Assembly (NCBI RefSeq): GCF_036321535.1
Contig: NC_087444.1
Location: 37,200,001 to 37,264,000 of the forward strand
DNA: 64,000 bases
Reading direction: 5' to 3'
From: Camelus dromedarius
Taxonomy: Eukaryota
The stretch's first letter is position 1. The number at the start of each line of letters is the position of its first letter. Below the pieces are notes generated by a model, which was given only the letters and a program-made list of their open reading frames with translations, searched no databases and was not told where the DNA came from. The translations under genes were made by a program, and so were the position numbers. Positions 1,949 through 61,407 of the stretch are shown here, one piece after another.

Positions 1949-4900
1949 CTTGGGGATGAGCCAGCCAAACTTGTGATCGTTGACACCCAGGAGGAAGGGC
2001 ACAGAGTGGAGCTGCCTCTCCCTCAGGAGCTCATTGGGGGTCTTGGGAAAGAAGGTGCTGTCAATGGTGTAGAAAGCTGTACCCTTTTGCAGGAGAAAGC
2101 AAGTCAGAGGGCCTCCCAGTCAGGATCAAGCCTCAAAATATGGGACCCCAAAGGTCACTTGGCTGCATGTCTGAGTGGCTAAACCTTGAGGAAAGGGAGG
2201 GGATGAGGTCACTAGGGCGAGAGGACCAGTGAGGGTCGGGAGACCAGACAAGCGATGCTTCTGAGCAGTCCTCTTCCTTAGAAGACAGGCCTGCCCTTGA
2301 GGCTGGGGCAGCCCTGCCTTCATGGCGCCGGGCCTAGTTGGGCCCTCAGCCACTACCTCTCAGAGGTGGCTACCTTAAGCCTCACCCCGGACTGCAAATT
2401 GCTCTCTGCTCCCACAGGAACTGGACAGGACCCCTTCTGTGCCACTGCCCACCACTGTCCCCTAAGAGGTGGGTTTACCAACTTCTCTGCAAGCATCAGT
2501 TCCTTGCTTGACTTCTGCCGAAGGCACTGCAACATCTCAGCCAAGGAGTTAGAGCCACAGGCCAAGGAGCTGGCAAAGCTCTGGGGACAGACAAGAGTGT
2601 CTTGCCTCTCTCTCTCATCCATCATTGCCCACCTTCCAGCCCCCTGCCTCCCATAGAGAGGAGATGCATCCATAGGAGGGCTGGGGTGACGATGTTAGAG
2701 ATGGGACCTTGACACTAGCCAGACACCTGCCACCAACCCAGAGAAGCCTTCCTTGCTCACCAGCCTGGGTGGTCCCCAAGCAGCCTTTGTGTCCCCCATT
2801 ACATCATACTGTCATTATCTGTATGTGTGTTTAGGTCTCCTTTACCCTTCTGAGGAAAGTGTTATTACCAAGTTAACTCTATTCTCAGAGCCAGTGGGAT
2901 CAGTAAAGATTTGTGGAGTGAATAAGGAAATGAGATATAGTTTAGATGGGGAGGGATTCCAGCATGGGCTACTCTGGTAGGGAGGGAATGGGGGTCAGTG
3001 CTGAGGCTGGAAGCAGATCAGGGAGTCAGTAGGAAGCGAGGCTGAAGGGATAATTTCTTGGATCATGTCATACCTGGTGGCACTGATGGTTTTCTCTGAG
3101 TTCTCACAGGTTGTGTGCTTCCTTCATCCTAGTTGGTCCCTCTCTGCCAACAAGAAGCTCTCTACTGGTAAGACCTCCACTCTGGGACTCCAGGGCAAAC
3201 ACAGGGTGGGATGTGGCAGGTACAAATGGGGTAAGAGAGTGAAAGAAATGCAGACCTGAGCCAGGGGCCAGGGGTCAGAACTCAGAAATCCTGGTAAGGT
3301 GATGATTCCACTCTGTGCTATAGCTCTGTGGAACAGCCCTGCAGCCAGTGGGGACAGGACCTGGGTGCAATGTAGAGGACAGATGGCCGTCAGAAGAGGG
3401 CAGAAGATCTGGGAGGTCTGGGGCCACAGGAGACACCATCACTAGCCCCTTTGGTGACTCACCAGGGCAGAGACGATGCAGGCACCAGCAGATCCACCAA
3501 AGATGGTGACAGAGTTGAAGTCACCTCCAAAGGGGGTGATGTTCCCCTGCACCCAGCGCAGAGCAGCCACTACATCAAGGAAGCCCCAGTTGCCAGGGGC
3601 GTGCTTGTCCCCAGTGCTGGGGGTAGAGTGGGGCAGTGGTTAGGGTGGGCTGGCTCCCCTGACAAACTTTCTTCAGCCTTTGCAGGTTTGCTTTGAGCCA
3701 GCCACTAGGATGCCAGACTTTCTCCTGCTCCCCAAGTCTGGCCTGGCTATGAACCACACTTGGTATTCATATACCCAGCACGTGGAATGGGAGGGCCTGG
3801 CTAGGCCAACTGCCAGCTCTGGCTCTTAAGTGCTTGCTAAAGCTCTTTGTTCCTTGACCCCCATGCCCTGCTGGCCCCAGACCAGAAGCCAACACTTTCT
3901 TCCCAAAGGACAAAGTCCACTGAAAACTGCTGGCTTTGGTTGAGCCCCTCCCTCAGGGTGGAGCCTGGGGAAGCACCCTTCTCTGCCTCAGATATCCTGC
4001 TGGCCCAGGAGATCTTCCTTCAAGCTCCAGACCCTCACTCTAGATCCCCAGCTCCTCTCACGAGCTGGCCTCTCCTCAGTGCAGTCAATATCCTCTGCCA
4101 GGACTGCCACCTCACCTGAAGAAGCCAGGGATCCCCAGCCGGTATTGGACTGTGACCACTACCATATCCCCGTAGGCGGCCAGGGCTGAGCCATCGTGGG
4201 AAGTGGCGGCGCCAACCACGAAAGAGCCCCCATGGATCCATGCCATGACCTGCAGAGATGGCCACGGGTCAGTGACACCCCCCAGCCTATCAGGGCAGGT
4301 CATTCATGGGACCCCCGGAGTGGTTTCAGAGCAGGGATGGCAAGGTGGCAGGCCAGGCGGAGTGGGCTGGATGGACAGGGCCCTCTGGGCTGCACACCGG
4401 CCTCCCAGCCCCTGAGGTGGCCTCAGCTGGGCTGTAGATGTTGAGGATCAGGCAGTCCTCCGAAATCGGAAAGAGCTGGTGTTTTCCGTCCAGCGTAAAT
4501 CGGCTGTTGTTCATTCTCTCCACATCCTGTAGGCACCTGTGGCTGGGGAGGAGCCCGAGGGCCAATAGGTCAGCCCCACAAACCCCAGCAGCTGGACTCC
4601 CACTACTTGCTAGCTTGCCCGCCTCCACCGGGGCTCCTTACATTGCAGGGACCGTGCTGGCATCCCGCACACCCTCCCAGGACGGCGCTGGGCGTGGGGC
4701 AGAGAACTGGCTGGGCCCCAAGGGTGGCTGGGTGAACGGGATGCCCAGGAAGACATTCATGAGCCGGTCTGTGCCCTTCACACCCACCTGCCGGCTCCGC
4801 ACGCTGCCAAGGGTGGTGTCCACTTCAGGCTGAGTGATCCCTGGTCCTGAGGGCAGGACAGAGGGGCTGTGGGTGAGTGGCAGCTTCCACGAGAGGATGG

Positions 4901-5478
4901 GTGGCAGACGGAGTCACTAAAATGTTTGCTCTCTGAGCACCTCTGCCACGCCCTGTTCTGAGCCCTTAGGTGAACTTCCCCAGGCTGCCTGTGAGATGGT
5001 CTTTGTGATTACCCACCACTTCCTCCTCCCTACCCTGCATCACCACCTTTCTCCTCCAGGCCAAACTATTACTTAGAGTAAAGGAACCAAGCTCTTCTGG
5101 AACTCACAGACCTGTGGGGTGGGGGATGGGGAGTGGGCTCAGGCCTTGGGCCAGGCACTCACCCTCTCTGAACCTCAGATAGCTCACACACACACACACA
5201 CACCAGCCTGTGAGGACAGAGCCCCCGCCCAGAGAGGACATACAACCCCTGGCATTCCTCCGAATGAATGGAGGGCTCCTTCCCTGGGCAGGCTGCCCAC
5301 CCTTTCCTGTCCCTACCTCACTCTTGCCCCCTCCCCTCAAATCCTCCCACAAACCCAGAAGCTCCCACCTCTGGAGGCCCTGCAGGGGTGTCTTACCAGC
5401 GGCTGTAGCAGAGAATGGCAGGAGTAGACAGGCCACCCAGACCAGGACCCTGGACCCAGTTCTTACTGCTGCCTCCAT
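1949..5478 (-). CDS. CES3: Carboxylesterase 3, coding exons 1-8 (later exons not found in the window); probably catalytically impaired
   Basis: Exons (minus): 5478-5397, 4846-4642, 4536-4398, 4249-4116, 3616-3463, 3360-3256, 2580-2479, 2086/2083-1949; phases compatible. Signal peptide [34 protein letters not shown] oxyanion motif, GGSAG nucleophile. The acid position reads GVNDHKFGW instead of GVNNHEFSW, and the exon 8 acceptor is ctcctgcAA. Confidence 0.93.
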
Positions 5479-6316
5479 GCTCCTTGCTCACAACTGGCTG
5501 CTGGCGGAAGTGGCAGAAGGTGGAATAAGATAAAATCCCTGCCCTTTGGCACAACCAGTCTCTAAAGGGCTGCTAGGAAAACCTCAGCCTCCAGCCCCAG
5601 CTGGCTGGTGGCAGCCCTAAGAACAAGCATCTAGTGCCCAGACTTGGGGAGGGGGGAGGTGGGGCAGGGAGAGTGCCCTGCAGGGGCCTGGGTGACATGC
5701 CAGCCCAGGGCTCTGCAGCTCCAGGTTCAAGTTCCAGTCTCCTGACTCCATGACTTCTATGAGATCTTGTACACTCATTGCAAAATACACATATCACCCA
5801 CCTGAGGAAGTGGTGGCCATGACCCCAGTCAGGCCTGAGGTGGGGGTTGGTGTCTAGTCCTGCCTGCCAGGAGGTGTGTCTGAGCCCTGATGCAGGGTGG
5901 AGGGAACTGAAGTTGATACTATTTTTTTTTAAATTGAGGTTAAATTCACATAACATACAACTGACCATTATAAAGTATACAGTTCAGTGGCATTTAGTGT
6001 ATTTGCAATTTTGTGCAACTACCATATTGCTCTAGTTACAAAATACTTTCATTACCCCAGCAAAACACCCTGTACCCATTAATTAGTTACTTGCTGTTCC
6101 TACCCCTGCCCCTTACCTACCATGCCTCTCCCCACCTCCCCTGATAACCTGATAATCATTAATAAACTTTCTGCCTCTATAGATATACCTATTCTGGATA
6201 TGTCACATAAAAGCAATCATATAATATGTGAGCTTTTGTGTCTGTTTTCTTTCACTTAGCAGCATGTTTTTATGGTTCATCCAAGTTGTAGCACTTATCA
6301 GTACTTTGTTCCTTTT

Positions 6317-6407
6317 TTTTTATTTTAACGAAGGTACTGGAGATTGAACCCAGGACCTTGCGCATGCTAAGCACGCACTCAACCACTGAGCTACACCCTC
6401 CCTCCCT
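6317..6407 (-). mobile_element. tRNA-derived SINE (camelid type) with a 16-bp target-site duplication
   Basis: Reverse complement reads gagggtgtagctcagtggttgagtgcgtgcttagcatgcgcaaggtcctgggttcaatctccagtacc, with A box, B box and A-rich tail. TSD gtactttgttcctttt at 6301-6316 and 6408-6423. Confidence 0.92.
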
Positions 6408-6456
6408 GTACTTTGTTCCTTTTTATGGCTAAGTAATATTTCACCGTAGGGCTGTA

Positions 6457-6608
6457 NNNNNNNNNNNNNNNNNNNNNNNNNNNNNNNNNNNNNNNNNNNN
6501 NNNNNNNNNNNNNNNNNNNNNNNNNNNNNNNNNNNNNNNNNNNNNNNNNNNNNNNNNNNNNNNNNNNNNNNNNNNNNNNNNNNNNNNNNNNNNNNNNNNN
6601 NNNNNNNN
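6457..6608. other. Assembly gap (152 N)
   Basis: Run of N inside an L1 fragment. Confidence 0.99.
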
Positions 6609-6984
6609 TTGCCGGTGATATGGTAACTCTATGTTTAATGTTTTGAAAAATGGACAAGTTCTTTTCCATGGTGGTTAGATGATGCTCTTACAGAGCCTCA
6701 GTGCCTTGGGCTGGAGCAGCCCTGCCATGGGGCCCCAGGACTGAGGACACCCAGGGTGTATGTTGGGGTGACCTTCTCATGTAGGTAACTCTCTTGGAGG
6801 ACCCTCAGATGACAAGGCAGATGCAGGGCACTACCCTTAGGTGGCCCTGAGACTCCAGGGCAGGGAGAGCTGGGGTCTGCAGGTAGGGATGCTGGGGGTG
6901 GGTTGCGGGGAGGAAGATTCCTATTAACAACTCAAACCCCATTCCAAATCCAGGGAAGATAGGACTTAAGAGCCAGACCTCCTG

Positions 6985-7095
6985 CACTCAAATCCTGGCT
7001 CTGCCAAGTGACAGCTGTGTGACCTGGTACAAGTTATTTCACAGCTCTGGGCCTAGTTTTATCATCCATAAAACAGCGATGATAGGAGGAATTGG
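6985..7095 (+). mobile_element. MIR fragment
   Basis: caaatcctggctctgcc...gctgtgtgacctgg..caagttattt...ctctgggcctagttttatcatccataaaa resembles the MIR core. Confidence 0.75.
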
Positions 7096-7594
7096 CTCAC
7101 AGGGTCAAAGTGACGTTACATTGTGAAAACACGCAGCATGAAACCAGAGCCAGTGGGAGCCTGTTCTTGTGTCACAACGCGGTCTGTCAGGGTGTCTGTC
7201 TCCCTGCTGGTGTGGCAGACCCTCACCCAGGGAAGGGCAGGACTCACCTCTGGGCCTCAGTGTCAGGAACCTGGCTGACTGGGAGTGGAGGCGGGGGATG
7301 TGGAGGGTGTGGGGCACTGGCAAATATTTGCTAATTTGAACAGTTGGCAGTGCTGATTTGATGAGAGACAGGCTGAGGGTCGTGCCAGGACAACTTGCCA
7401 GATCCTCTCTGGGGTTCCAGCTGGCAGCTTGAGCTGGGGAGCCTTAGGGTCAAAGTTCTGTCCTGCCAAAAATAACCAGTGCAGCTTCCTGATCCTCTTT
7501 GGAAGCCTCCCTGGCGGGGCTGCTTCCTCTCCCTGAATCTTGATTCATAGGTATATGCAGGAGCTGGTGTTAGAGAGAGAGAGAGAGAGAGAAA

Positions 7595-8290
7595 CCACCA
7601 CAATGAGATACCACTACATACCCATTAAAATTAATCAAACGTAAAAGACTGATAAGACCAAGTGCTGGTGAGAATATAGAGCAATTGGAACCCGCATATA
7701 TGCTGGTGGGCATGCAAAAATGGTATAGTTGCTTTGAAANNNNNNNNNNNNNNNNNNNNNNNNNNNNNNNNNNNNNNNNNNNNNNNNNNNNNNNNNNNNN
7801 NNNNNNNNNNNNNNNNNNNNNNNNNNNNNNNNNNNNNNNNNNNNNNNNNNNNNNNNNNNNNNNNNNNNNGACTTTATTAAAAATAGACAAAAAATAGAAA
7901 TCACTCAAATGTCCATCAAGGGGTGAATGCATAAAATGTGGCATGTCATGTATAGAATACTACTCAGCAAGAAAAGAGAAGAACTACTGGCTGAATCTCA
8001 AAAACAGTGTACTAAGAGACAGAAGCCAGTAAAAAGATGATTCCATTTCTATGACACTTGGAAAAGGCAAACTATAGCGACAGAAAGCGGTTTAGTGGTT
8101 GTGTGGGTCAGGGTGAGGGCAGTGCAAAGGGTCATAAAGGAAATTTTGGAGCAACAAATGCACCCTAAAACTTAGTAGTTGTGTGTCTTATACATTTATC
8201 CAAATTTATCAAACTATACATCTAAAATGGGTGAATATGTTTGTATGTAAATTATTCTACAACAAAGCTGTTAAAAAATAAGATTACTAA
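7595..8290 (+). mobile_element. Old LINE-1 3' fragment with an N-gap at 7740-7869 (130 N)
   Basis: aaaccaccacaatgagataccactac...ccaagtgctggtgagaat...tatagaatactactcagc...gattccatttctatga. Confidence 0.85.
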
Positions 8291-8490
8291 AGCTAGTCCT
8301 AGGAATACACTTTGTGGAAGTATCCTGTGTATCTGCAGGATGAAAAATGTACAGAGGCATGCGTGCCATAAGTGCTTAATAAATGCTTTCTGGATGCAGG
8401 GGAAGCACTATGCACCAGTTAAGTGTTCACTGAAAGGAAAGCCCCTTCCCTCTCCTGAGTTGGTCGTTTCAAACTTAAGGTTATACTTTT

Positions 8491-8507
8491 CTGCCATCTG
8501 GTGGCCA
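8491..8507 (-). promoter_or_regulatory. Strong CTCF motif, reverse orientation
   Basis: Reverse complement TGGCCACCAGATGGCAG matches the CTCF core CCASYAGRKGGCRS exactly, plus the 5' TGG. Motif match only. Confidence 0.7.
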
Positions 8508-8679
8508 GAGTGGGCAATGCTGGAATCTTCATCAAGCCTCACTTCAGGAGGTTCCACAGTTGGGCTTAAACACAGCGAGACAGAAAGAAGGGGGACTTTC
8601 CTTCTGGGAAATCTAGTGCCAGAGGGTCAGAGGTGGGGAGTCCTGGGTCTATGAGAAGAGGAATGCAGCCTCTTAATGA

Positions 8680-9135
8680 CAGAGGGAAACTGCTTTGGTG
8701 GAACAAAGAGGCAGAATGAACATAATTGCTACCTTTACCTGTTGAGATAAAATATAAGAGAGGGGTTTTTGCAGGGAGAGGGTAAAGTGAGAATAAAAGT
8801 TTAGGGAAAACAATGAGGTAAGTAACGAAAATAATGTGGATGCACCCAGTGAGTTGGTGAGATAGGAGAGCAAGTGATGCTGAGCCAGGTATGGGCAGAC
8901 ATTCCCCAAAGCATCCTCCTTCAAAGGGAGAGGAGAGAGGGTGGGAAGGGAGTGGAGGTGAGGAAGGGAGGATGGGGCCAAGGGCCCAGTGGGATGTTGG
9001 GAAAGGTAAACTTCCATTGGGATTTGCCCACCCCCAGCTTTGTGGGAGGATTTATTGAGTGTGTCTAACAAGAAAGGACCCATGGCAGGCTTGGCAACTA
9101 ACATGTGGTAAGTTCTTAAATGTTTGCTGGGGGGA
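8680..9135. mobile_element. L2 fragments downstream of CES2
   Basis: Purine-rich L2-like text and L2 3'-end motifs (tttattgagt; ggtaagttcttaaatgtttgctg). Confidence 0.6.
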
Positions 9136-9141
9136 TGGATA

Positions 9142-9217
9142 GAAGAAGGAAGGAAGGAAGGAAGGAAGGAAGGAAGGAAGGAAGGAAGGAAGGAAGGAAG
9201 GAAGGAAGGAAGGAAGG
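9142..9217. repeat. (GGAA)n tetranucleotide microsatellite
   Basis: About 18 perfect GAAG units. Confidence 0.98.
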
Positions 9218-9686
9218 GCTATGCAAATGAAGGAAAAACTACTGGTTCCTCACTGGGTGTGTGTGGGCACCTCTGGCAGACCCCCACCTGCACTCAAGCC
9301 CACACCCCAACCCCTGATGCAGGAAGCTACAGTTCTGTGTGCTTCTCCTTGGCCTCCATTAGCTCCTGCATCTTCTCAGGTAGGGTCTTTGTCCAGAACT
9401 GGAGCCTGTGGGCCTTCAGGGTCCGGCCCACTACAGGCTGCATGTCCAGCTGCAGGTATTGCTCTCCTCCTGGTCAAACAGGGGCCAGTGGGGCAGACCC
9501 TCGCTGTTGGGGTTCCTGTAGACATGCCCACCCATGGAGCAGTGTGAGAGTCACTGTGAGCCCTACCAGGCCCAGACCCGAACATCCTGACTGAGGCCAG
9601 GCAAGGCAGCCAAACAGGGCTTAGGGAATGAAACAGGGAGGTTTCCAGAAGTAGGAAAGAATCTACCTCCCACCAGAGCATCAGCT

Positions 9687-9700
9687 CCACCAGGTGGCAG
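9687..9700 (+). promoter_or_regulatory. Strong CTCF motif, forward orientation, in CES2 intron 11
   Basis: CCACCAGGTGGCAG matches the CTCF core exactly. Motif match only. Confidence 0.65.
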
Positions 9701-10419
9701 AGCAGCCTGTGTTCTTTCCTGACAGAGGGAGGCTCTGTCAGTAATAGCACTGTCACCTCCCCTCCAGATGACCCAGGGATGGCATAAGTGTCCAGCATCC
9801 ATAACGCCCCTCTTTGTCCAAGAGGGTCCTGGAGCTGGGGAGAGGGCTGCCACTCAATTAAAGACATCTATGCTAATGAGGTCACCACAGACAAGGGAGT
9901 CCTGATTGGTTCAAGATACACCCCTCAACTGTGGAGGTTAAAGTAAGGATGCAACATCTCACCCATTTCGAGCAAAGTTGGCCCAGTACTTCATCATCTT
10001 CCTGCTCAGCAGCAGCTCCTCCTCAGTCATTTTGACTACAGAGCAGTAGGACAAAGGTCCTGGTCAGGGTAGCTCCAGGGCAGCATGTGGGTCATTTCGC
10101 AAACCACTCTCACCATCCCAGGTGTAGCTTTCCCCAGCCCCTCCCTGCCAGCCTAGACCTGGCTCTCTGCCTGCTCCCCAGGCCCTCTCCTCGCCCAAAC
10201 CCCATATATTCATCTCAGGCTCTGGCTGACCTGACACTAGGCTCAGGCCTGACCCAGAGGGCTCCCTTCTTCCTTCTGATACTGGAAGGGCATTTAAGAA
10301 ACAAATATGCCTTTGAAACAGCCCCCTCTGCACCCATGCCAGATACCCACAGTCAGGGTGGGGAGAGGTGGAGGGTGCATAGGTCCCTGTTCGAAAAGCC
10401 CTGTACTCCAATGTGAGCT

Positions 10420-11060
10420 CAGTCTTTCTGGCTGTCAGATCTTGGACACTTGATCCCGTCCTGTTTTGGAGCCTCAGTTTCCTCATCTGTACAGTGAGGG
10501 CAATTACCCTCTCTCAGGGACTCAGCCAGTGTACCGACTCACATCCTGGGAATGAGGGGCCTCTGAGGAAACCCGCCCAGGAAGACTCACCATAGCGGCC
10601 CCGGAAAGGGTTTCCAAAGACAAAGAGAACCTCATCTCCATGGTCTGCTTTCACATAGCTTGGCTTGATGTCCTTGGAGAAGCTGGGTTGATGCTGGAAC
10701 TCGTAGAAGTAGACAGGGGCATGGGAACCTGGGGAGGTGGGGTAGACAGGCTATGACGTGGCGGCTTCTCACCTGGAGTTTTCTTGAATTACCCATGGTG
10801 ATGACACAGCTAAATCCAAAGCTGGTTGGGATCTGGACAATGAGGCGAGGGAGCCCCAGGCGGGAGCAAGGGCAGTGGGAAGGGCCTGGGTTTAAACTGT
10901 GGCTTTGGAACTTCCTGGGGTACGGTCTTCGGCAAGTCACTGAAGGTCAGTGAACCTATTTCCTCATCTGTAAAAAGGAATAAATGTCTGTCTCTTAGAC
11001 TAGCCGTGAGGATTTACCAAGATGAAAGATATTAAGTGGCTGGCACCTGAGCCCAATAAA
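10420..11060 (+). mobile_element. Two MIR fragments in CES2 introns (about 10420-10505 and 10890-11060)
   Basis: agcctcagtttcctcatctgtacagtgagg; ggcaagtcactgaa...tttcctcatctgtaaaaagg. Confidence 0.7.
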
Positions 11061-12597
11061 CAGACGTGGGCTGGGACCTGGACACCAGTAGACCTCAGCT
11101 GTTACCTGCAGCTCTGAGTTTCTCCCTTGCCAGTCTTCCCTTAGTTCCAGATGTACTCACGCTGAAAGTTTGCTACTTGGAGTGCAGGGATCACAAAGAG
11201 GTAGTCTTCCATCATCTCATGGAACTGGGTTTGGAGGGTCAGGGGGTCCTCATTGTCTCCTATGTACTCCTCCATCAACAGGTCACCCATCTCAGGAGAC
11301 AACATCTGCCCCAGGTGGATCAGGAAGAGTCAGGTTAGGCAGGCTGGCCGGGGCAGGGAGGCGGCAGGGTCAGGACTGGGGAGATGGATCCTGGGATGGG
11401 ATAAGGAATCAGGGGAAGGGGCCAAGCTCTGCAGGGGTAGTGCATGGACAGGGTATCCGGGAGATGGGCTTCCCGTGCCTTGGAAGAGGAGAGGAACCCC
11501 TCCCATGGGGGCAGGTCCCCAGAAGCCTCACTAACATTGTTGATGCTTTCTGCAAAACAGCCTTCACGGTCTCTCTGTTCATTTCCGTCTGGGTACCATA
11601 TTTGATCAAATCCTGGGTGGTGGGGGGGAGTCTCGAGTTGGAGATGGGATAGCCTGGAGCTATGAAATCCCTAGGCTCCCCCACGAAATGGGATCCCGGC
11701 ACCTAGAGGCTTGGGAATGGGCCTTACCGAGGGGATGATCCAGCCGTACTCATCGTTGTTGACACCAATGATGCTGGGGACAGGTTGAAAGTCAGCAGAG
11801 GCCAGAAGCTCCTGGGGGTGCCTGGGCAGGAAAATCCCATCCACCAGGCCAGGGATGATCTTGAAGGCCTAAGGGGCACTCAAAGTCAAGTTGCAGACAT
11901 TTTCTGATGCCACAGACATCTTCTGCCCCTTCCTTGCTCATTCCAGGATGCTCACACCCACACCAGGAGGTCCGACACCTGCGTTAGCATGGCCTGGCCT
12001 TAACTCCCCATCCAGGGCTGTGAGGACCCCAAGGTGTGGAGATAGAGTAACCTTCCCAGGGAGTATGAGGGGCACTCAGGCTTGCCTGTCCTACACCTAT
12101 GGGCCCCCTTCCTCCACACCCGCACCCATTCAGTCCAACCTTGTTGATGGCCAGAATCTCCTCTTCACTCTTGCCCCGCAGGCAGTTCATCAGGGCCTCT
12201 GAGTCAACCTGGCCACAGGCAGACAGGTTGGCCACTATCTATAAAGAGACCAGGTAGGGGCTAGCTCATCCTTCCAGGTAAGGGAGAGTGGTTATCCTGA
12301 TGCTCCAGTTGGAGGCAGGTGTACCCCAAATCTCACAGAGTATCATGAGTGGATTCCTACACTTTTGAAATTATTCTGATTTCCCTGATGCTCAGAGGTC
12401 TCAGCTAGAGGGGCCATCCCACCTGCCAAGATGGTCTGGCCCATGATGGGGGCCCCCAGGGTGTCAGTTTTGGGGGCCACAGAATGACTCAGTCTCCGTG
12501 CTGGTAGAGGTCTGTGGATTCTAAGCCTGAAACAATCCCGGGATAGACAGCTATTCCCAAGGTGCTCTGATGACAGGGGAGTCCTTGTCCCCATTTA

Positions 12598-12858
<261 letters not shown>

Positions 12859-15549
12859 CTAGACCCAGTGTAGTGCAGCCACTTGATCCAGGTAGCCCCA
12901 GTTGCCAGTTGCATGTATGTCTCCAGTGCTGCGAGGGGGCAGGGATGGCGGTCATGGAACGGTCCTGGCTTTGTCAGCCCACACTGCCCAGTCCAGCCCC
13001 AGTCTCACCTGAAGAAGCCCAGCACACCCAGGCGGTACTGGGTAACGACCACTATGACGTCCTCGAAGGCTGCCAGTGCAGACCCATCATACATGGAAGC
13101 CATGCCCATCACAAGCAAGCCACCATGGATCCACACCATCACCTGGAGAATCCAAGGCACAGATACCACGTTGCTCCCACCCAGCCCAAACCCCACCAGG
13201 GATGCTGCTTAGACTAACCACCACCTTGGCTCTGTCTGTCTAACAATGTGGACAAAACTCGATATATTCATGCCCCGGGGCTGAAAGTGACCCAAGTTCC
13301 ATCAGGAAAGCTGGGCCTCCCACACTTTGGGGTCTGTCCCATGTACCAAGGCCTGGCTCCATTTCTCCCAGAACACTCTCTGAGGTGGAAAGAAAAGGGG
13401 TGTCTCCCTGATCACCCCACATGCATATCAATTAAGGAAAGTGTTCTCTATTCTCATTGGCCCGACAGATAATCCCTGGCTGGGGTCTCTGGCCACCTCA
13501 ACGGGCAGCCCTCAGTCACCTGAGTGGGTCTCCTGTGCATGAGTTGGTTAGGTGAGTCCCGGGTCCCTCCCAGGGCCACCGTTTCTGATCTCTGGGAGCA
13601 GCCAGGGTTCTGCAACCCTGTGCCCAGGGGTCAGCCACCCATGCTGGGTAAGAAGGACTCTCTTAGATCTAATAGTAAGAAGCTTCTTAATAGGGTCCAC
13701 ACTGCAGTGGAGCCCAGGCTGATCCTGTCCTTTTTCAATTTTCTTGCAGAAAAAATGTCCTCCCACCCCTTAGCCAGCTGTGACCTGGCACTCACAGGCA
13801 GGTTGGAGCCCTCGTGGGTATGGGCAGGTGTGAAGATGTTGAGGTACAGGCAGTCTTCAGACATGGAGGTGGAAGGCAGGGTCATATTCAATACTTTCAC
13901 AAACATTGCATTCATGCTAGCCGTATCCTGCAGACACCTGGTGGCAGTGGCAGGCAGTCAGTGCTGGAGCCGTGTCATGGCCATAAACAGATCCCACCTA
14001 CCCTTGGTCCCACTTCCCTCGATACCCTGCTCGCACATGGTCCTTTCCTAAAGCCCCTTTGCACCAAGTAAGTTACAGGCCACAGGTTCTGGGGAAGCTG
14101 TCTTCTGGAGAGGCGTCAAGCTTATGAAGTCCTTGGATACCAGTCCTCCTGAGGCTGAGAAATCCTGACTCTTGGGGGTCTCTATGAGAACCATTGGTTG
14201 CATGTGTTGACACTCACCACCATATCACTGTACTCAGATAGGCCTGGAACAGGGAAGTAGCCCATATACATGTGCTGCCAGAATGAATGGATGTTAATTT
14301 CTCACAAGAAGGGGAGTGGGATGTCCCTTGTTCCAAGTCAGACTCTCAAGGAACCTCATCACTCCCATATAGTTTCCAGCTGCAAGAATATATACATGCC
14401 CCTTGGTCAATGGCACCCAGCCCTGTCAGCTGGTGCAGTGACTGTGCAGAGTGGGGGTTCCCCACTCCTCAGGGATCTACTGTATCTGCTGCTACAAGGT
14501 TCACACCTCTCCCAGAGACACCTCCTCTTGGCATAACTAGAACGTGGGGAGATGTGTATCTCTGCTCATCCCTTCAGCATGTGGAGCTAATGCTCTTTGA
14601 GTGTTAAGCCCTCAGCCTGGGAGTTACTCCACCCTTTCAAGGCTCAGCATGCTCATCAGAAAAATGCATGTGGGGATCCATCAAACTCAGAGGGAAAACT
14701 GGCTGTGGGCATTTAGATAAAATGACAATGGTGGCCTGGCCCAGAGCTCTGAGTACCTTCTATCTCCAGGGCCTAGAGTTCCCTGCACTCTCTGCTTACA
14801 TGGCCGGGTGGGAGGTCCCATCCTTTACACCACTCCAAGATTCTGGGGGCTCAGGGGGCACAAATTGCAGAGGCCCCAGAGGTGGCTTGGCAAAGGGAAT
14901 TCCCAGGAAGGTGTGGACCCTCACATCAGTGTTCTTCATGTGGACGAGACTCCCTCGCACTTGCCCTGTGTGTGTCATCCGGACAGGGCTGGTAGAGTCC
15001 TGGCCTGTGCGCAGAGAGATGGATATCAGGGTTAGGTCTCCCCCATCAGCTGCCCTCCCCAACTGTTGATATGGCTACCTCCTTCCTGTCCTCAGCTCAG
15101 TTCAAGGGACACAGGTGTACCAACATTTGCTTTGCAGATTTCCTTCCTGTATCTCTGCCCTGACCCTTGCCACTGCCTTCACTGAAAGGTGCCAGCCTTT
15201 CCCACCACACTCAGTGAGGCTCCCTGGGGCTTTGCCCCATGGTTTAGCGCCAGGAGCTTCAAACAAACAGCCACATGAGCTTGATGGGAGAGTGTCCTTT
15301 CCACTCACCGTGTGCCAGGTCCTAGGAGGCAGTAGGAGAACTGTGGGAACAGGACAGACAAGGTTCCTGCCCTTAAGGATCTCACACTCTAGGTGGAAAG
15401 AAATGACAGAGAGAGAGTATCCTCCAGAAAGTGATGTTATGAAGAGAACTACAAGGTGAAGTGCAGGTGAGTCTAGAATGTGAACAGTACAGCCCGCCCT
15501 GCTGTGGGGATCAGGGAGGCCTGAAGAGGCTGCACGTCACCTCACAGAG

Positions 15550-17210
15550 AAAGAGCTGATATTCACCATAAATAAAGAATGTCCACAAATGAATAAGAAA
15601 TATGCCAGCTGCACATATTTGGTAAAAGAATATGAAATGGAGAAAGAATATGTTCAGACAGAACAAGGAAAATAAATAAATGGCTCTTACACAAATGAGA
15701 TGTTCATCTCCCTTGTGCTAAGAGAAATGCACACTGAAATCTGTGAGGTCAACAACTTACATTGTCACAAAAAACAAGACAGTCAGATGTTGTATGTTTT
15801 CTACTGGAAGTCCACTGCACCACATATGAAGTAGTCTTTCCCCCAAACAAAGCAAAGCAAAACCTAAACTCTAAATCTGATCAAGCCTCTAGAACACAAA
15901 TACAAGTTTAGAGACATACAAGGGACAGAGAAACAGTTAAAAGACACCATAGGGAGATAAATAAGTTTATACTGTATAGCACAGGGAAATATATTCAATA
16001 TCTTGCAGTAGCTTACAGTGAAAAAGAATATGAAAATGAATATATGTATATTCATGTATGACTGAGAAATTGATACAATATTGTAAACTGACGATACCTC
16101 AATAAAAAAGTAAACATATAGATAATTTTAAATAAAATCTGATTCTATAAAATAATTTTTTAAAAAAGATACCATAGGGATGTAATCAGCAAAACCCCAA
16201 TTCTGGATCCTCTCCAGAACAGACAGACTAGTTTCTTCAACACACCAACAAAATTACAAGGAAAATAAAAGAGAGGAAGAGGAGGAATCTGAAGATTGAA
16301 AGAGATTCATGAAATACTTCAAAAAGACAATAAAAATGTTGGAAAGGACGTAGAAAAACTAGGACATTCATACATTGCTAGTGGGAAGGGAAAATGGTGC
16401 AGGTGCTTTGGAAGATATTCTGACAGTTTTTCAAAANNNNNNNNNNNNNNNNNNNNNNNNNNNNNNNNNNNNNNNNNNNNNNNNNNNNNNNNNNNNNNNN
16501 NNNNNNNNNNNNNNNNNNNNNNNNNNNNNNNNNNNNNNNNNNNNNNNNNNNNNNNNNNNNNNNNNNNNNNNNNNNNNNNNNNNNNNNNNNNNNNNNNNNN
16601 NNNNNNNNNNNNNNNNNNNNNNNNNNNNNNNNNNNNNNNNNNNNNNNNNNNNNNNNNNNNNNNNNNNNNNNNNNNNNNNNNNNNNNNNNNNNNNNNNNNN
16701 NNNNNNNNNNNNNNNNNNNNNNNNNNNNNNNNNNNNNNNNNNNNNNNNNNNNNNNNNNNNNNNNNNNNNNNNNAGACAGAAAGCAACCCATCCGCTGAGG
16801 TTGGGGCGAAAGGGGAATTGATGTGATGAACTCTGAATATACTAAAAACCACTTTAAGTGGGTGAAAGTTATGCTATGTGAATTATATCTCAAATCTGTT
16901 ATTAAAAGAAGTACATCTACCAATGTTTAAAGTATAAACCTTATTTAAATCATTGTTTTTAAAAAATCATAAATATGAGATAATATGAAATGAGAATATT
17001 TGATTAGATATTTGATTATACTAAGGAACTATGAGAGAAATATACCTTTTATTTTACTAGGACAGGATAAAAAAAAACTTACAGATGATATGATGTCTGG
17101 GATTTGCTTCAAACAAATAACGGTGCAAAGGAGAGGTGATAGTCCAGACAAAACTAAGGTGCCCAGGTATTGATATTTGTTGAAGGTAGATCATGAGTTT
17201 ATTACATTAT
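15550..17210 (+). mobile_element. Cluster of L1 fragments in CES2 intron 1, with an N-gap at 16437-16773 (337 N)
   Basis: L1 motifs (aaatgcacactgaaatc; ggaaaggacgtagaaaaactaggacattcatacattgctagtgggaa; gaattatatctcaa). Confidence 0.8.
15956..16163 (+). mobile_element. 5'-truncated younger L1 3' end with a 17-bp TSD, nested in an older repeat
   Basis: Body tatagcacagggaaatatattcaatatcttg...aaaaagaatatgaaaatgaatatatgtat...AATAAA. Flanks aaaagacaccataggga (15939-15955) and aaaagataccataggga (16164-16180), one mismatch. Confidence 0.8.
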
Positions 17211-18999
17211 CCTCTCCTCCTCAGATGGGGAGCCCTGTGGTGCTGTGTGGTCTTGGGCAGCCCTGACCCTCTCTGTGCCTCAGGGTGCAGGGAGTTATCC
17301 AGTCAGGCTCCCAATTCCCCCGGTGTTATCTCCACTGGCTCCCACCTTGCGATGCCTTTCCTCCTGCAGGCTCAGGTTCTTCCTCTGCAGAATTTGGCAG
17401 GCCTGAGCCTGGTTTCATAATAAAAAGTTTAACAAAACAAAACAAAACAAAACAAAAAAACAGGCTCAGGGAGCTATACTATCCCACACCTATCAGATCA
17501 ATGTGGATCAACATTCTTGATGCCACCTGGTGTAGGTGAAGCCAGAGTCAGCAGCTACAGGCCCCAAAGAGGGCAACTGAGCAATATCTTTCCAACTCAA
17601 AAGGCCCACCCTTCTCCCCAGTATCATATTGTCTACACAGCTCCTTATGGGATGTGATGTCTGTTCCTGTACTTCACTGTTGCCAGTGGCCTCTAATGCT
17701 TGATGTTTGTTATAGCAAAGGACAAAACCTGCTAAAATGTCCCTGATCAGAAGCTGGGTACATACAGGATGCTTTCTCTTTGAAGAGAAGCCCTTCTATT
17801 AAACAGTATGAAGAAGTTCTACCATGTGCAGGTGTGGTGAGGTCACCCCCTGTGTCAGGAAGTGGAAAAGCTAGGCACCAGAAAGGGAGGGAATTTCTGA
17901 TCATTTAGGTGAAAACCAAGGCTGCATGTACACATCTGTTCCTGGTAAACTCCTGGTCAGTGTGTGGAAGGTCCCAGAGAACTTGATGGTCCCTGTTGGA
18001 TAACACAGAACTGGATGGGACAGGAGAGGGTGAGAGCCATCACCTGTACTTATCAATTCTTTCTTTCTGAAAGTGGGTCCAATCCAACATAGCAACATTT
18101 CTAAAAGGAGGTGTCAGCGAGGCCTAGTAGATCGTGGTGCGGAAGGTTCTGGTGAACTCCTGGAGCCTGATCAGTGATGGGTAAGGGGGAAGCCCTGTGG
18201 AGTTGGCCACAGGGGATGGATTAGTGTGGACAGGCAGATTCCACTGGGAAGTGAGAGGATAGTCAGGCTGCACAGGCAGAGCCCGTTTGGATAAGAGGAT
18301 CACGCCCTTCCAAAGGGGGTACAGGAGGTGCAGACACACCCAGGCACAGTCCCCACATAGCCTAAGCTACCTATAAGGGCTGACATAAAGAACGATCACC
18401 TTTGCCCTGGAGGCCAAGGTATGCCCTCCCCCAGGGTTGGCACATAGGGTGAAGAGAAGGAGGTGCTAATCTGATAGGCTTTAGGATGGGGAGGTGGGGA
18501 GCTGGGAGGTGTGCTCCTATAGCCAGAGCCAGTAACTTGCCTGGGGTTCCTGTGGAAGGGGGCTCAGTGGGTGTCAGGACGCCCCTTTAGCCAAGGATGC
18601 AACACTCAGAGCTAAACGGCAGCAGAAAGATACTATTATTTCTGTTATTACCCAAGGGCAGCGCCAGCTCCACCACAAACACTAAGAAAGAAAGTCCCAA
18701 ATCCGCCCTTCCCTCCCAAAGACCACCAGGTGCTGCCAGAGTCCCTAGGGGCCGCTGGGCCCTCAGTGTACTGTGACCTGGGACAGCCCCTGCTCTCCAT
18801 GCGCCTCAGGGGGCGCACCCTCATTGGTCACCGTGTGTCCGGTCTGGCACACGGTTCAGGGGCTATAGCTCTCCAATGGTTCCCACCTCCTCGACGCCTG
18901 TCCTCCCGCAGCCTCGGGTCCTGACTCTGCAGAATTTGGTAAGTGCTATCCCGGTCTCTGTTGCCTTATGCGGGACCCTCACCCTGGCCCGAAACGAGA

Positions 19000-20600
19000 A
19001 GCAGGAACCTGAAGGTCACGGCGCTCAGCCACAAGCGAAGTCTGTCCAGTGGCATGGTGGGCTCACAGTCTTCTCTTTTTTGCGCTACCGGGAAGCAAGC
19101 TGCGTTTCACCGAGAGGCTCCTCGGGGGCCGGTCCAGCAGTCGATTAGTGAGTGCCCCACCAGACCCGGAGTTTGGACTGGGCAGACTGGGCAGGGAGTA
19201 GGCGGGGAAAGGTGAGTTTGGCAGGAGAGTGGGACTGAGCAGGCAAAGGCCAGTGGCAGTCACGGTCGCTTGCCCCCTGCCCAAGCCCACTTAGGCCTTC
19301 TCCGAAGGGGCCTTGTGGCTTCTGCAGCCCCTCCGCAGTATCAAGAGCCCTCTCCTCAAACCTGCGTTCACTATCCTTACAGTCAAAGGCCCGATAAGGG
19401 TGTTGGGGGGCGAGAGAGAGCAATCAGCTGTGATTGGGAAAACCAGGAGAGCTTCCCTGAGGTGCATGATCAGGATTCACAAAGACGGAGAAACAGAAAC
19501 GACCTTCGACCTTCGGTCAGAGAGAAGGGAACCGCCTGAGTAAAGGCAGGGAAGTGTGACTGCCCATCATTCCAAAAACTCCTCCTTGCTTTCAGGGATT
19601 AATTTCCTGGGTCTGCCTTCATCGCCTTACTGTTCCTGGTCCGAGGGTCTTTGCGGGCCCCCTCCCTACTAGGCAATGCCTCGTCTTTTGAAATGCACAA
19701 CGGATTGTGGCACTCATCTTAAGGACACCCTCAGCCCCATCCCGTGTCTTTCCCTCTTCCCACCTTCCGCCAAAATCGAGTTCACGTTCACTTATTCATT
19801 TGACAAAAACTGAAAGAATGACTGCTGGTCCGCGCGCTAGGGGCCAGGAGAGCACTCCTGGACCAAAGTTGCAGCAGGGGCTGCAGGTGCGTCACCGTGA
19901 AGTCGCGAAACTCAGTGAGCCGTGCCAGGAGAGGCAACTCTGGGCAAGGGAGCGCCCGCCCAGCCTAAGGGGCAGAATTCCCGGGGGAAGTTATGCCTGA
20001 AGGAAGATACGCCAGGCTCAATCTCAGACGGGTCTTCAGTGTCCCAGCCTTGGCCTCCGCCGTCCAGCACGCTACGGGCTCACACACGGGGTCTCTTCTC
20101 CGTGCCTTTGCTGGAGTGCTCCGCATTTTCCCAGGTCTGCGCAGAAAATGAGCATAGGTCACTCTTCCACTCAAACCTCAGGCGGAGTACCGGCAGCGCA
20201 GCGTGTCCCTCGCCTTAACCCGTCGCCACGCCACGCCCCTCCTCGTTCCCCGGAAGTGCGCAGGCAGGAGCGGAAGTACACGCCTACAGTAGCCCGCCGC
20301 GGTTCCGCAATGGTGGGCGGCAGTGGGATGGGGGGCGGCCTCTTGGAGAACGCTAACCCCCTCATCTACGAGCGCTCTGGGGAGCGGCCAGTGACCGCGG
20401 GCGAGGAGGACGAGCAGGTTCCAGACAGCATCGACGCCCGCGAGATCTTCGATATCCGTCGCAGCGGGGCGCGGGCGGGTTCGCGGGGGCCTGGGAGGGG
20501 GGATGAAGTGATTCCAGTAGTCGGTGGAGCAGTATCAGGGCCAGGCTTTCCCGGCGGAGGGTTGTGAGTGGACAGAGGCGCAGAGTCCCCTTTCCTTCAC
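19000..20600. promoter_or_regulatory. Head-to-head CES2/CIAO2B promoter region, CpG-rich
   Basis: ATGs at 19055 (-) and 20310 (+) are 1.25 kb apart. CpG-dense from about 19830 to 20570. ETS-type CCGGAAGT at about 20250 and CGGAAGT at about 20271. Confidence 0.8.
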
Positions 20601-21141
20601 TTGCCACATCTGATTCGCTGCATCAATGACCCGGAGCATCCACTTACGCTAGAAGAATTGAACGTAGTAGAGCAAGTCCGGGTTCAGGTGAGTCACTTCC
20701 AGCGTCCAAGGGGAGCAGCTTCTTCGGGAGAGTCAGAAAAGTTCAGCTGTGCACCACGGGGCTGGCGTTCTCTCAGTTCATGGACTCCTCAGGGAATCTT
20801 TGAAGGATGGGGGGAGTGTGCGTCTGCCCATTTCATGGATGAGGAAACAGGCCCATACCGGTTAGACAACTTGCCTGAAGTAACAAACTAAGAAGAGGAG
20901 CTCTGGGCTAGGCAGATCATGACTCCTAATATCCTATTCTCCCAATCAGGTGAGCGACCCCGAGAGCACAGTGGCCGTGGCCTTCACACCCACCATTCCA
21001 CACTGCAGTATGGCCACCCTTATTGGCCTGTCCATCAAAGTCAAGCTTCTGCGATCCCTTCCCCAGCGTTTTAAGGTAAGTTGGAACTGAGCCCTGGGGG
21101 TGGGGCAAGCGTGTCTGCTACTGCAGAGGGTATGGAGGACC

Positions 21142-21200
<59 letters not shown>

Positions 21201-22117
21201 GAGACCTAGAAGGATCCCAGCTAGCAGCGATGAAACTGGGAGGAGACTTTCAAATGGGTGGGACAAGAATAAAGGCCTCGGCTGGAAAGTGCAGAAGAGT
21301 AGTGAGGAGGCAGGAAGGGCAGTAGGGAGCTGTAGATAGGTTTGTAGCAGGGATAGGGTGCAGGCAGGCCTTTAAGTCAGCAGCAGTTGGCCAGTCCTTT
21401 GGGTAGAGTTGGAGAGGCTGTGGGTGGGTTTGGGGTGTAATGGAAGTGCCAGAGTCCAGAGGCATGAGTAGGACAAGGGATCAGCTGCAGGTGGTGAGTG
21501 GGGATTGGGGAAAACGGTGGGTAGACAGGTGTGTGAGTGCTCAGGCCCCACCTGTCTCCCTCCCAGATGGATGTGCACATAACACCAGGGACCCATGCCT
21601 CGGAGCATGCAGGTAGGTGTGGGCTGATGTTGAGGCACTGGCCTTGAGGCTTCCCCCTTGCCGTGGTGGTTTGTAGGGTAAGATGGAGGGGAGGGGGTGT
21701 AGCACTAGGTAGGTGACTCCTCAGTGTGGGTAGGACCCTAGATCGAAGCTGCACTGACTTGAGTCTCCTGTGTTTATCATGTTCTCCCACTCCTGCCCTC
21801 TCCCTCTCCTAAATACTCAAGACCAGGGTTTGTCAGGTTTATAGTATAGGAGGCAGACTTGAGTGGCCAGGTGGGAGGGGTCACAAGAAGGTGGGATGGG
21901 TGTTGGCTCAGGTGGTTGGGGTAGCCTGATCAAGGCTTGGGGTCCTGGGAAGGAGGTGATAGGAGAGCTTTGTTGGTGGGGGTATAAATGTATTTCACCA
22001 CTCTCTCCTTTCCACCCAGTGAACAAGCAGCTTGCAGATAAAGAGCGGGTGGCAGCTGCCCTGGAGAACACCCACCTGCTGGAGGTTGTGAACCAGTGCC
22101 TGTCAGCCCGCTCCTGA
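20310..22117 (+). CDS. CIAO2B: Cytosolic iron-sulfur assembly component 2B (FAM96B/MIP18), 5 exons, 163 aa, intact
   Basis: Exons 20310-20451, 20608-20687, 20950-21075, 21567-21612, 22020-22117 total 492 nt. Reads MVGG...[10 protein letters not shown]...[21 protein letters not shown]...[16 protein letters not shown]...[16 protein letters not shown]...CLSARS*. Confidence 0.97.
20452..20607 (+). other. U12-type (minor spliceosome) AT-AC intron, 156 nt
   Basis: 5' ATATCCGT, branch-like TTCCTTCAC at 20592-20600, 3' ..GCCAC. Only these boundaries restore the frame IF-D-LIR. Confidence 0.9.
21145..21194. repeat. (AT)n microsatellite in CIAO2B intron 3
   Basis: About 25 perfect AT units. Confidence 0.98.
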
Positions 22118-61055: not shown

Positions 61056-61407
61056 TCTGAAACTGTACAAGAAAATGTGTTTCTTCAGCAAAAAGTTTTT
61101 TCTTTAAACCTGGAAATTAAGAGTTTAAGAAACTTTTAAATTTAATTTTTTAAAAATACTGACTTCTGAAAGTCGGTTAATCTCAAAATACTTAAGCAAG
61201 TCTCCCTACCTCCTACTGTAACATATAAACACATTCCAGCAAATGTAGAAATCAGGGTTTTAAAACCTCTGCTCTTACAGAATCACAGAGGGCTTTTCCC
61301 AAGGGCCCCCTTTCCTTCTTCCCAAATCCTTTTCCTTGCCAGAGCCCAGTGCCAAGCTCCGGGGTTCACACTCACCAGTAGGTGTTAAGTGTTTGCATAA
61401 ATGTAAG

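What the first reader, a model, noticed from the sequence alone, without database searches (positions are those of the whole stretch)
1949..19055. Joint decay of adjacent CES2 and CES3 with no local backup copy
Seen: only one CES2 lies between CIAO2B and CES3, and the two genes together carry four separate lesions, while the four neighbouring genes are intact at orthologue length. All splice sites and most motifs are otherwise preserved, so the decay looks recent. Inference: lineage-specific loss of the CES2/CES3 arm of ester hydrolysis, with possible consequences for veterinary ester prodrugs, plant-ester handling and lipid metabolism. I do not know whether this has been reported. It is the strongest candidate for something new in this window.
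Basis: inference. Interest (0 to 1): 0.85.

Follow-up and report, generated by a model that had tools for sequence, protein, structure and literature searches.

The report
Dead CES2 gene in camels
In this camel genome the gene for carboxylesterase 2, a gut and liver enzyme that splits ester drugs and some fats, is broken by a stop codon and a frameshift. The neighbouring CES3 gene, already published as inactivated in Old World camels, has lost a catalytic residue, so camels probably lack both enzymes.

Summary
Both genes lie on the minus strand. CES2 is complete at 19055-9327: 12 exons, orthologue exon sizes, all introns GT-AG. It carries two frame-breaking lesions. One is TAG at 12861-12859 (codon 208), where six orthologues have CAG. 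The other is a 2-nt insertion in a GAG repeat of the last exon (9462-9469), which removes the HTEL end.

The stop-bearing 31-mers occur in DNA runs under three organism labels and in RNA runs, so the stop is not an assembly error.

Only CES3 exons 1-8 (5478-1949) are in the window, and their frame is open. The two CES3 "lesions" are the catalytic Glu changed to Lys, and a lost acceptor AG with an in-frame AG 3 nt downstream. The three N gaps lie in CES2 intron 1 and in the CES2-CES3 spacer, and touch no exon. Only one CES2 lies between an intact CIAO2B and CES3.

Omega on the camel branch is ordinary for both genes, and CES2 has only two lesions, so the decay is recent.

A 2025 paper already reports CES3 inactivation in Old World camels. 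I found no report of CES2 loss in camels. The verdict is a real, modestly new unitary pseudogene. Whether an intact copy exists elsewhere in the genome is untested.

The parts
9327..19055 (-). CES2 unitary pseudogene. It has 12 exons: 19055-18983, 15004-14800, 13937-13796, 13142-13009, 12928-12670, 12238-12140, 11868-11728, 11612-11532, 11305-11161, 10728-10591, 10035-9963 and 9515-9330. The ancestral stop is at 9329-9327.
   Evidence: tblastn against rhino CES2 P0204. Splice map with every intron GT-AG. Exon sizes equal those of bison, Lipotes and rhino, except -3 nt in exon 1 and +2 nt in exon 12. Pfam COesterase matches on the exon pieces. Intron-level collinearity with the bison and Lipotes loci.
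12859..12861 (-). Premature stop TAG at codon 208 in exon 5, upstream of the catalytic Ser227, Glu344 and His456.
   Evidence: Sequence read directly. CAG in bison, Lipotes, rhino, horse, cattle and panda. Gln in 143 and Arg in 8 of 151 CES2 proteins. The 61-nt stretch in which every 31-mer contains the T is held by DNA runs of organism labels A, B and C and by RNA runs.
9462..9469 (-). A 2-nt insertion in a GAG repeat of the last exon. Its exact placement within GAGGAGAG is ambiguous. The shifted frame ends at TAG 9433-9431 and loses the last ~43 residues, including the HTEL end.
   Evidence: Six orthologues are 2 nt shorter here. Support from reads is indirect only: 14 DNA runs hold 0.99-1.00 of the sampled words of 9300-15100.
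1949..5478 (-). CES3 exons 1-8 only: 5478-5397, 4846-4642, 4536-4398, 4249-4116, 3616-3463, 3360-3256, 2580-2479 and 2086 (or 2083)-1949. The frame is open over 353 codons. The gene runs off the start of the window.
   Evidence: tblastn against horse P0338 and pig P0368 CES3. Exon sizes are identical to horse, cattle and panda. Pfam COesterase matches.
1970..1972 (-). The CES3 catalytic-triad Glu codon is changed to Lys (GAG to AAG; GVNDHKFGW).
   Evidence: One search shows GAG in horse, cattle and panda. One search shows Glu in 50 of 51 CES3 proteins. The only other Lys is the dugong LOW QUALITY model P0402.
2084..2088 (-). The CES3 exon-8 acceptor AG is changed to AA (2088-2087). The next AG (2085-2084) is 3 nt downstream and in frame, so it would drop one codon at a variable position.
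16437..16773 (.). Assembly gap inside CES2 intron 1.
6457..6608 (.). Assembly gap in the CES2-CES3 intergenic spacer.
7740..7869 (.). Assembly gap in the CES2-CES3 intergenic spacer.
20310..22117 (+). CIAO2B, the divergent upstream neighbour. It is intact at 163 aa with 5 exons, and marks the edge of the CES2 slot.
   Evidence: The same RRAD-CIAO2B-CES2-CES3 order is seen in bison, Lipotes and rhino.

Best explanation
The single syntenic CES2 of this camel is a recently inactivated unitary pseudogene.

A C-to-T change turned Gln codon 208 into TAG. That cuts the product to 207 residues, before the catalytic Ser, Glu and His. Because the stop sits in exon 5 of 12, the transcript should also be a target of nonsense-mediated decay (inferred). 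A second, independent 2-nt insertion in the last exon would remove the C-terminal HTEL ER-retention signal.

The stop is shared by runs under three organism labels. This is most simply read as the three Old World camel species, so the loss would predate their common ancestor.

The adjacent CES3 is also non-functional. In this window it has lost the catalytic Glu, and a premature stop has been published for Old World camels.

Camels therefore most likely lack both CES2- and CES3-type ester hydrolysis and rely on CES1 and other hydrolases. That last step is inference.
For: - Gene structure and lesions.
- Orthology by synteny and by intron-level alignment with the bison (76.5%) and Lipotes (81%) loci.
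- Six intact orthologues carry CAG at the stop position and lack the 2-nt insertion.
- Stop-specific 31-mers occur in DNA runs of organism labels A, B and C and in RNA runs.
- 14 DNA runs from 8 studies hold 0.99-1.00 of the words of 9300-15100.
- No camelid CES2 protein is among the 120 best hits to rhino CES2. The conceptual camel protein is 80% identical to rhino, above bison and Lipotes, which are both listed.
- Only one CES2 lies in the CIAO2B-CES3 slot.
- CES3 has Glu346Lys at a column that is Glu in 50 of 51 proteins. It has 6 private changes at columns at least 98% conserved within 353 codons, against a median of 1.
- CES3 inactivation in Old World camels is published: PMC12127551.
Against:
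- The run search lists holders only, so a segregating intact allele cannot be excluded.
- The organism labels are coded. Dromedary identity comes from other agents' notes. My own evidence only places the genome as a cetartiodactyl outside ruminants, cetaceans and pig.
- Omega on the camel branch is not raised. It is 0.39 (0.26-0.6) for CES2 and 0.33-0.54 for CES3.
- An intact CES2 paralogue elsewhere in the genome could not be searched for.
- The published CES3 stop is not in the window's 353 codons.
Confidence: 0.8

Rival explanations
1. CES2 function is kept by an intact paralogue elsewhere in the genome, so only this copy decayed and the enzyme is not lost.
For: CES2 is multi-copy in many mammals. 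Rodents, squirrels and rabbits filled the hit lists. The whole genome could not be searched with these tools.
Against: The slot between CIAO2B and CES3 holds one CES2-like gene here. One CES2 gene was called in that slot in bison, Lipotes and rhino. From my own knowledge, not tested here, known CES2 duplicates lie in tandem in that slot. No camelid CES2 protein appears among the 120 best hits to rhino CES2, although an 80%-identical protein should have ranked there.
Confidence: 0.12
2. One or both CES2 lesions are assembly errors, or alleles still segregating, and many camels carry a working CES2.
For: This is a short-read assembly with N gaps. The 2-nt insertion sits in a short GAG repeat. 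It was never examined in reads.
Against: The stop alone is disabling. Its 31-mers are held by at least 16 DNA runs from several samples and studies, under three organism labels, and by RNA runs.
Confidence: 0.05
3. CES3 is still a working gene with an altered or non-catalytic role, so there is no joint loss: only CES2 is dead.
For: The frame is open over all 353 codons in the window. Exon sizes are unchanged. The lost acceptor has an in-frame AG 3 nt downstream. Omega on the camel branch is 0.33-0.54, which is not neutral.
Against: Lys replaces the triad Glu, and the only other protein with that Lys is the dugong LOW QUALITY CES3 model; CES3 loss in sirenians is published. Camel CES3 has six private changes at near-invariant columns. 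A premature stop in all three Old World camels is published (PMC12127551).
Confidence: 0.15

Closest known systems
CES3 inactivation in Old World camels (iScience 2025, PMC12127551)
   Same: Same lineage and same gene cluster. [quoted passage not shown] It interprets this as a metabolic adaptation.
   Different: The paper never mentions CES2. By its methods, genes labelled outright as pseudogenes were only kept as losses if the sequence itself was absent. The lesion it reports is not in this window. The Glu346Lys change and the acceptor shift seen here are additional.
Absence of CES2 from the pig genome annotation (PMC8023712)
   Same: This is another cetartiodactyl without a usable CES2. CES1 is the esterase detected in pig tissues.
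   Different: That paper states only that the gene is absent from susScr11 and describes no lesions. I could not fetch the pig locus. On the accepted tree, which is my own knowledge and was not tested here, a loss in suids would be independent of the one in camels, because ruminant and cetacean models keep an open CES2 frame.
Repeated CES3 loss in sirenians, cetaceans, hippos and phocids (bioRxiv 10.1101/2023.09.01.555811)
   Same: The same gene is lost repeatedly. The dugong model even shares the Lys at the triad Glu.
   Different: Those are aquatic lineages, and CES2 is still annotated in them (seals and dolphins).
Functional mammalian CES2 (human CES2, mouse Ces2c; PMC8131317, PMC9655854)
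   Same: Same 12-exon gene, same synteny, same Ser-Glu-His codons and the same HTEL end in the ancestral frame. The conceptual protein is 76-80% identical to bison, Lipotes and rhino CES2.
   Different: Here the frame is cut at codon 208 and shifted in the last exon, so no catalytic domain can be made.

Membership tests
CES2 orthologue (type-B carboxylesterase, Pfam PF00135) | COesterase domain | tested here: met
   Five of the six CES2 exon pieces scanned match PF00135 with E-values from 2e-23 to 6e-7. The C-terminal piece does not match.
CES2 orthologue (type-B carboxylesterase, Pfam PF00135) | Position between CIAO2B and CES3, head to head with CIAO2B | tested here: met
   Searches show the same gene order in bison, Lipotes and rhino. 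One search shows alignment through the introns.
CES2 orthologue (type-B carboxylesterase, Pfam PF00135) | 12-exon structure with orthologue exon sizes and an HTEL end | tested here: met
   HTEL is read only after the 2 extra nt are removed.
Unitary pseudogene | Frame-disrupting mutation where orthologues are intact | tested here: met
   TAG against CAG, and a +2 nt insertion, compared with six orthologues.
Unitary pseudogene | Lesion present in independent individuals or fixed | tested here: inconclusive
   The stop is held by many runs under three organism labels.
Unitary pseudogene | No functional paralogue in the genome | not testable with these tools
   Only the window could be searched, and it holds one copy. 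The lack of camelid CES2 proteins is indirect.
Unitary pseudogene | Relaxed selection on the lineage | tested here: inconclusive
   Branch omega is 0.39 (0.26-0.6), no higher than the bison, Lipotes or rhino branches. This is what a recent loss on a long branch would give.
CES3 pseudogene as published for Old World camels | Premature stop or frameshift | tested here: inconclusive
   There is none in exons 1-8. Exons 9-13 lie outside the window.
CES3 pseudogene as published for Old World camels | Loss of catalytic residues or decay at conserved sites | tested here: met
   Glu346Lys, plus six private changes at columns at least 98% conserved.

The most novel reading that the evidence does not exclude
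Old World camels are natural double knock-outs of CES2 and CES3, with no paralogue in reserve. The CES2 loss is unreported, a few million years old, and independent of the CES2 absence noted in pigs. Camel gut and liver would then handle CES2-type substrates only through CES1 or other hydrolases. Such substrates include ester prodrugs with large alcohol groups, and di- and monoacylglycerols.
Probability: 0.5. Interest if true: 0.5.

Novelty: new member of a known kind. Interest (0 to 1): 0.4.

Why it matters
CES2 is the main intestinal carboxylesterase in humans. It is also a di- and monoacylglycerol lipase linked to fatty liver and insulin resistance (PMC8131317, PMC11845761). A livestock species that lacks CES2, and CES3 as well, would activate or clear ester drugs differently from cattle, horses or people. 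That matters for camel veterinary dosing and residue studies. Such a species would also be a natural knock-out for the lipid role of CES2, in an animal known for unusual fat and glucose handling. As a kind of event it is ordinary: detoxification genes are lost often, and the CES3 half is already published.

Tried and rejected
I therefore have no pile-up, no test of the frameshift and no splice joints.
- I tried to pull camelid CES2 relatives by aligning rhino CES2 with the window's exon pieces. MAFFT scattered the fragments (alignment A1), so I did not use it.
- No camelid CES2 or CES3 protein came back from any protein search. For CES3 this says nothing, because the camel N-terminus shares only 13 five-letter words with the query, below the weakest listed hit.
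- The warthog CES3 isoform P0427 is not on record as a gene product, so the suid CES2 locus could not be examined.
- I could not fetch other camelid assemblies. The only handles were multi-exon neighbour proteins, which have no reference, and I did not type them in.
- GESAG to GQSAG was considered as a third CES2 lesion and rejected, because that position is variable.
- I considered that the paper's 'CES3 early stop' might really be this CES2 stop. I cannot exclude it without their figure. It is unlikely, because the paper names genes from RefSeq symbols or from human and mouse orthologues.
- Searches of earlier scan notes by sequence and by words found nothing on other CES genes in this genome.
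Full report
**Layout**

The window has four N runs. Six-frame reading shows that the carboxylesterase exons are on the minus strand. A representative search with one exon gave a full-length CES2, P0036. Two further searches gave named CES2 proteins, among them rhino P0204, bison P0310 and Lipotes P0295.

Fetched loci show the order RRAD, CIAO2B, CES2, CES3 in bison, Lipotes and rhino. The window aligns to the bison and Lipotes loci almost without breaks, introns included, at 76.5% and 81% identity. The gene at 19055-9327 is therefore the syntenic CES2 orthologue.

**CES2**

Against rhino CES2 all 12 exons are found. The splice map gives GT-AG at all 11 introns. Exon sizes are 73, 205, 142, 134, 259, 99, 141, 81, 145, 138, 73 and 186 nt. 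Bison, Lipotes and rhino have the same sizes, except 76 nt for exon 1 and 184 nt for exon 12.

There are two frame-breaking lesions:
- Codon 208 is TAG (12861-12859). Bison, Lipotes, rhino, horse, cattle and panda have CAG there. Of 151 CES2 proteins, 143 have Gln and 8 have Arg at this position.
- Exon 12 has 2 extra nucleotides in a GAG repeat (9462-9469). The shifted frame ends at 9433-9431.

With the stop masked and the 2 nt removed, the frame reads 557 residues and ends in HTEL. The Ser227, Glu344 and His456 codons are intact. GQSAG in place of GESAG is not a lesion, because Gln occurs there in 18 of 151 orthologues. Camel CES2 has only 2 private changes at columns at least 98% conserved, against a median of 1 in the others.

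**Gaps**

The gap at 16437-16773 lies in CES2 intron 1. The gaps at 6457-6608 and 7740-7869 lie between the end of CES2 and the start of CES3. Every orthologous exon is found outside the gaps. The flanks of each gap align to neighbouring positions in the bison and Lipotes loci. Continuity across the gaps therefore does not affect any reading frame, and no extra gene copy can be hidden there.

**Reads**

Fourteen DNA runs of organism label A, from eight studies, hold 0.99-1.00 of the sampled words of 9300-15100. A single changed base would lower that share by less than 1%, so this result is not decisive on its own.

I used the second run search on a 61-nt stretch centred on the T of TAG, so that every 31-mer contains it. 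Both sampled words are held by DNA runs of organism labels A, B and C, from several samples and studies. They are also held by six RNA or RNA-like runs.

The stop is therefore real and is shared by three labelled taxa. The pseudogene also seems to be transcribed. The frameshift has no test of its own.

**Which animal**

No CES2 or CES3 protein is closer than about 80%. Pig CES3 (I3LEI5, P0368) differs clearly from the window. Intron identity places the genome inside Cetartiodactyla but outside ruminants and cetaceans. Earlier scan notes by other agents call this genome dromedary. These are unchecked AI notes, but they fit my three organism labels as dromedary, Bactrian camel and wild camel.

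**CES3**

I obtained CES3 references through a golden-mole read-through model, P0296, whose residues 564-670 are CES3 exons 1-2. In the window, exons 1-8 have exactly the sizes seen in horse, cattle and panda, and give an open frame of 353 codons. Intron 8 is 4.7-5.3 kb in those species, so exons 9-13 lie beyond position 1.

The sequence shows three things:
- The triad Glu codon GAG is AAG (1972-1970). Fifty of 51 CES3 proteins have Glu there. The one other Lys is the dugong LOW QUALITY model P0402.
- The exon-8 acceptor AG is AA. An AG 3 nt downstream keeps the frame and would drop one residue at a variable position.
- There are six private changes at near-invariant columns, against a median of 1. 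Of the 51 others, four have six or more: an odd sea-lion isoform, the dugong model and two unnamed Logan transcripts.

This amounts to decay of function without a broken frame in the part I can see.

**Rates and timing**

Nei-Gojobori distances were resolved onto terminal branches.
- CES2: omega is 0.39 (bootstrap 0.26-0.6) for camel, 0.49 for bison, 0.50 for Lipotes and 0.31 for rhino.
- CES3 exons 1-8: omega is 0.33-0.54 for camel and 0.18-0.43 for the others.

No relaxation is detectable over the whole camelid branch. That is expected if the losses are recent.

From the branch dS, and assuming a branch of 64 My (my own knowledge), about 0.4-0.7 disabling events per My are expected in a neutral CES2. 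Two events then suggest about 3-5 My of decay, with a range of 0.3-19 My. Sharing of the stop by three labels puts the loss before their common ancestor.

**Backup copy**

The window has no other COesterase hit. CIAO2B is intact at 163 aa. Among the 120 best hits to rhino CES2 there is no camelid and no suid. Bison, muntjac and five cetaceans are listed. The conceptual camel protein is 80% identical to rhino, which is higher than bison or Lipotes. This points against an annotated intact CES2 in camelids, but it is indirect.

**Literature**

PMC12127551 reports CES3 among ten genes inactivated in the three Old World camels and not in alpaca, with a shared premature stop. CES2 is not mentioned in that paper. 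By its methods, genes already labelled as pseudogenes were kept as losses only if the sequence itself was absent.

PMC8023712 states that pig CES2 is absent from susScr11. CES3 loss in sirenians, cetaceans, hippos and phocids is published. Five searches found no report of CES2 loss in camels. The library does not cover everything, and public TOGA tables may already flag the loss.

**Verdict**

The CES2 observation is correct, and the gene is a real, recent unitary pseudogene in camels. The CES3 half is only partly visible here, and its inactivation is already published. The joint-loss reading is reasonable. The absence of a paralogue elsewhere and the physiological consequences remain untested.

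Noticed in passing
window 20452-20607 (+): Intron 1 of CIAO2B is an AT-AC intron. The donor is ATATCCGT and the acceptor is AC, with a TTCCTTCAC branch-like motif about 10 nt upstream. This looks like a U12-type intron. The other three introns are GT-AG.
   Followed up: partly
L002 (Lipotes vexillifer CES2, protein P0295): The baiji CES2 model has an open frame, but it has Arg at the catalytic His (ADRGDE) and GTSEG instead of GxSAG. It also has 12 private changes at columns at least 98% conserved, the most of 151 CES2 proteins. It may be enzymatically dead.
   Followed up: partly
protein P0402 (dugong CES3, LOW QUALITY model): This is the only other CES3 with Lys at the triad Glu, the same change as in the camel. 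CES3 loss in sirenians is published.
   Followed up: partly
protein P0296 (golden mole 'cocaine esterase', 670 aa): This is a CES2-CES3 read-through gene model. Residues 564-670 are CES3 exons 1-2. It was useful as a handle to reach CES3 proteins.
   Followed up: yes
window 59466-61091 (-): A single-exon PDP2-like frame with a PP2C domain stays open across the assembly gap 60613-60744. I made no attempt to read the gap.
   Followed up: partly
window 12831-12891 and 9300-15100: RNA runs hold the stop-bearing exon-5 words. Several RNA runs hold 46-76% of the words of the 5.8-kb genomic stretch, which is more than its exonic share of about 28%. One run, under organism label B, holds 23%. The pseudogene seems transcribed, partly as unspliced RNA or as DNA carry-over.
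   Followed up: partly
window 9055-9238 (-) and 1166-1288: There are simple repeats just downstream of CES2 (a TTCC-rich run read as SFLP repeats) and a GT/CA run in CES3 intron 8.
   Followed up: no
proteins P0281, P0286, P0287 (Pseudorca, Orcinus, Sagmatias CES2 models): The listed CES2 models of these three delphinids do not end in HTEL. Their last six residues are KGPQSG, DTGCCI and VTGCCI. The Tursiops model P0288 ends HTELNC. I did not check whether this reflects real C-terminal change or alternative models.
   Followed up: no
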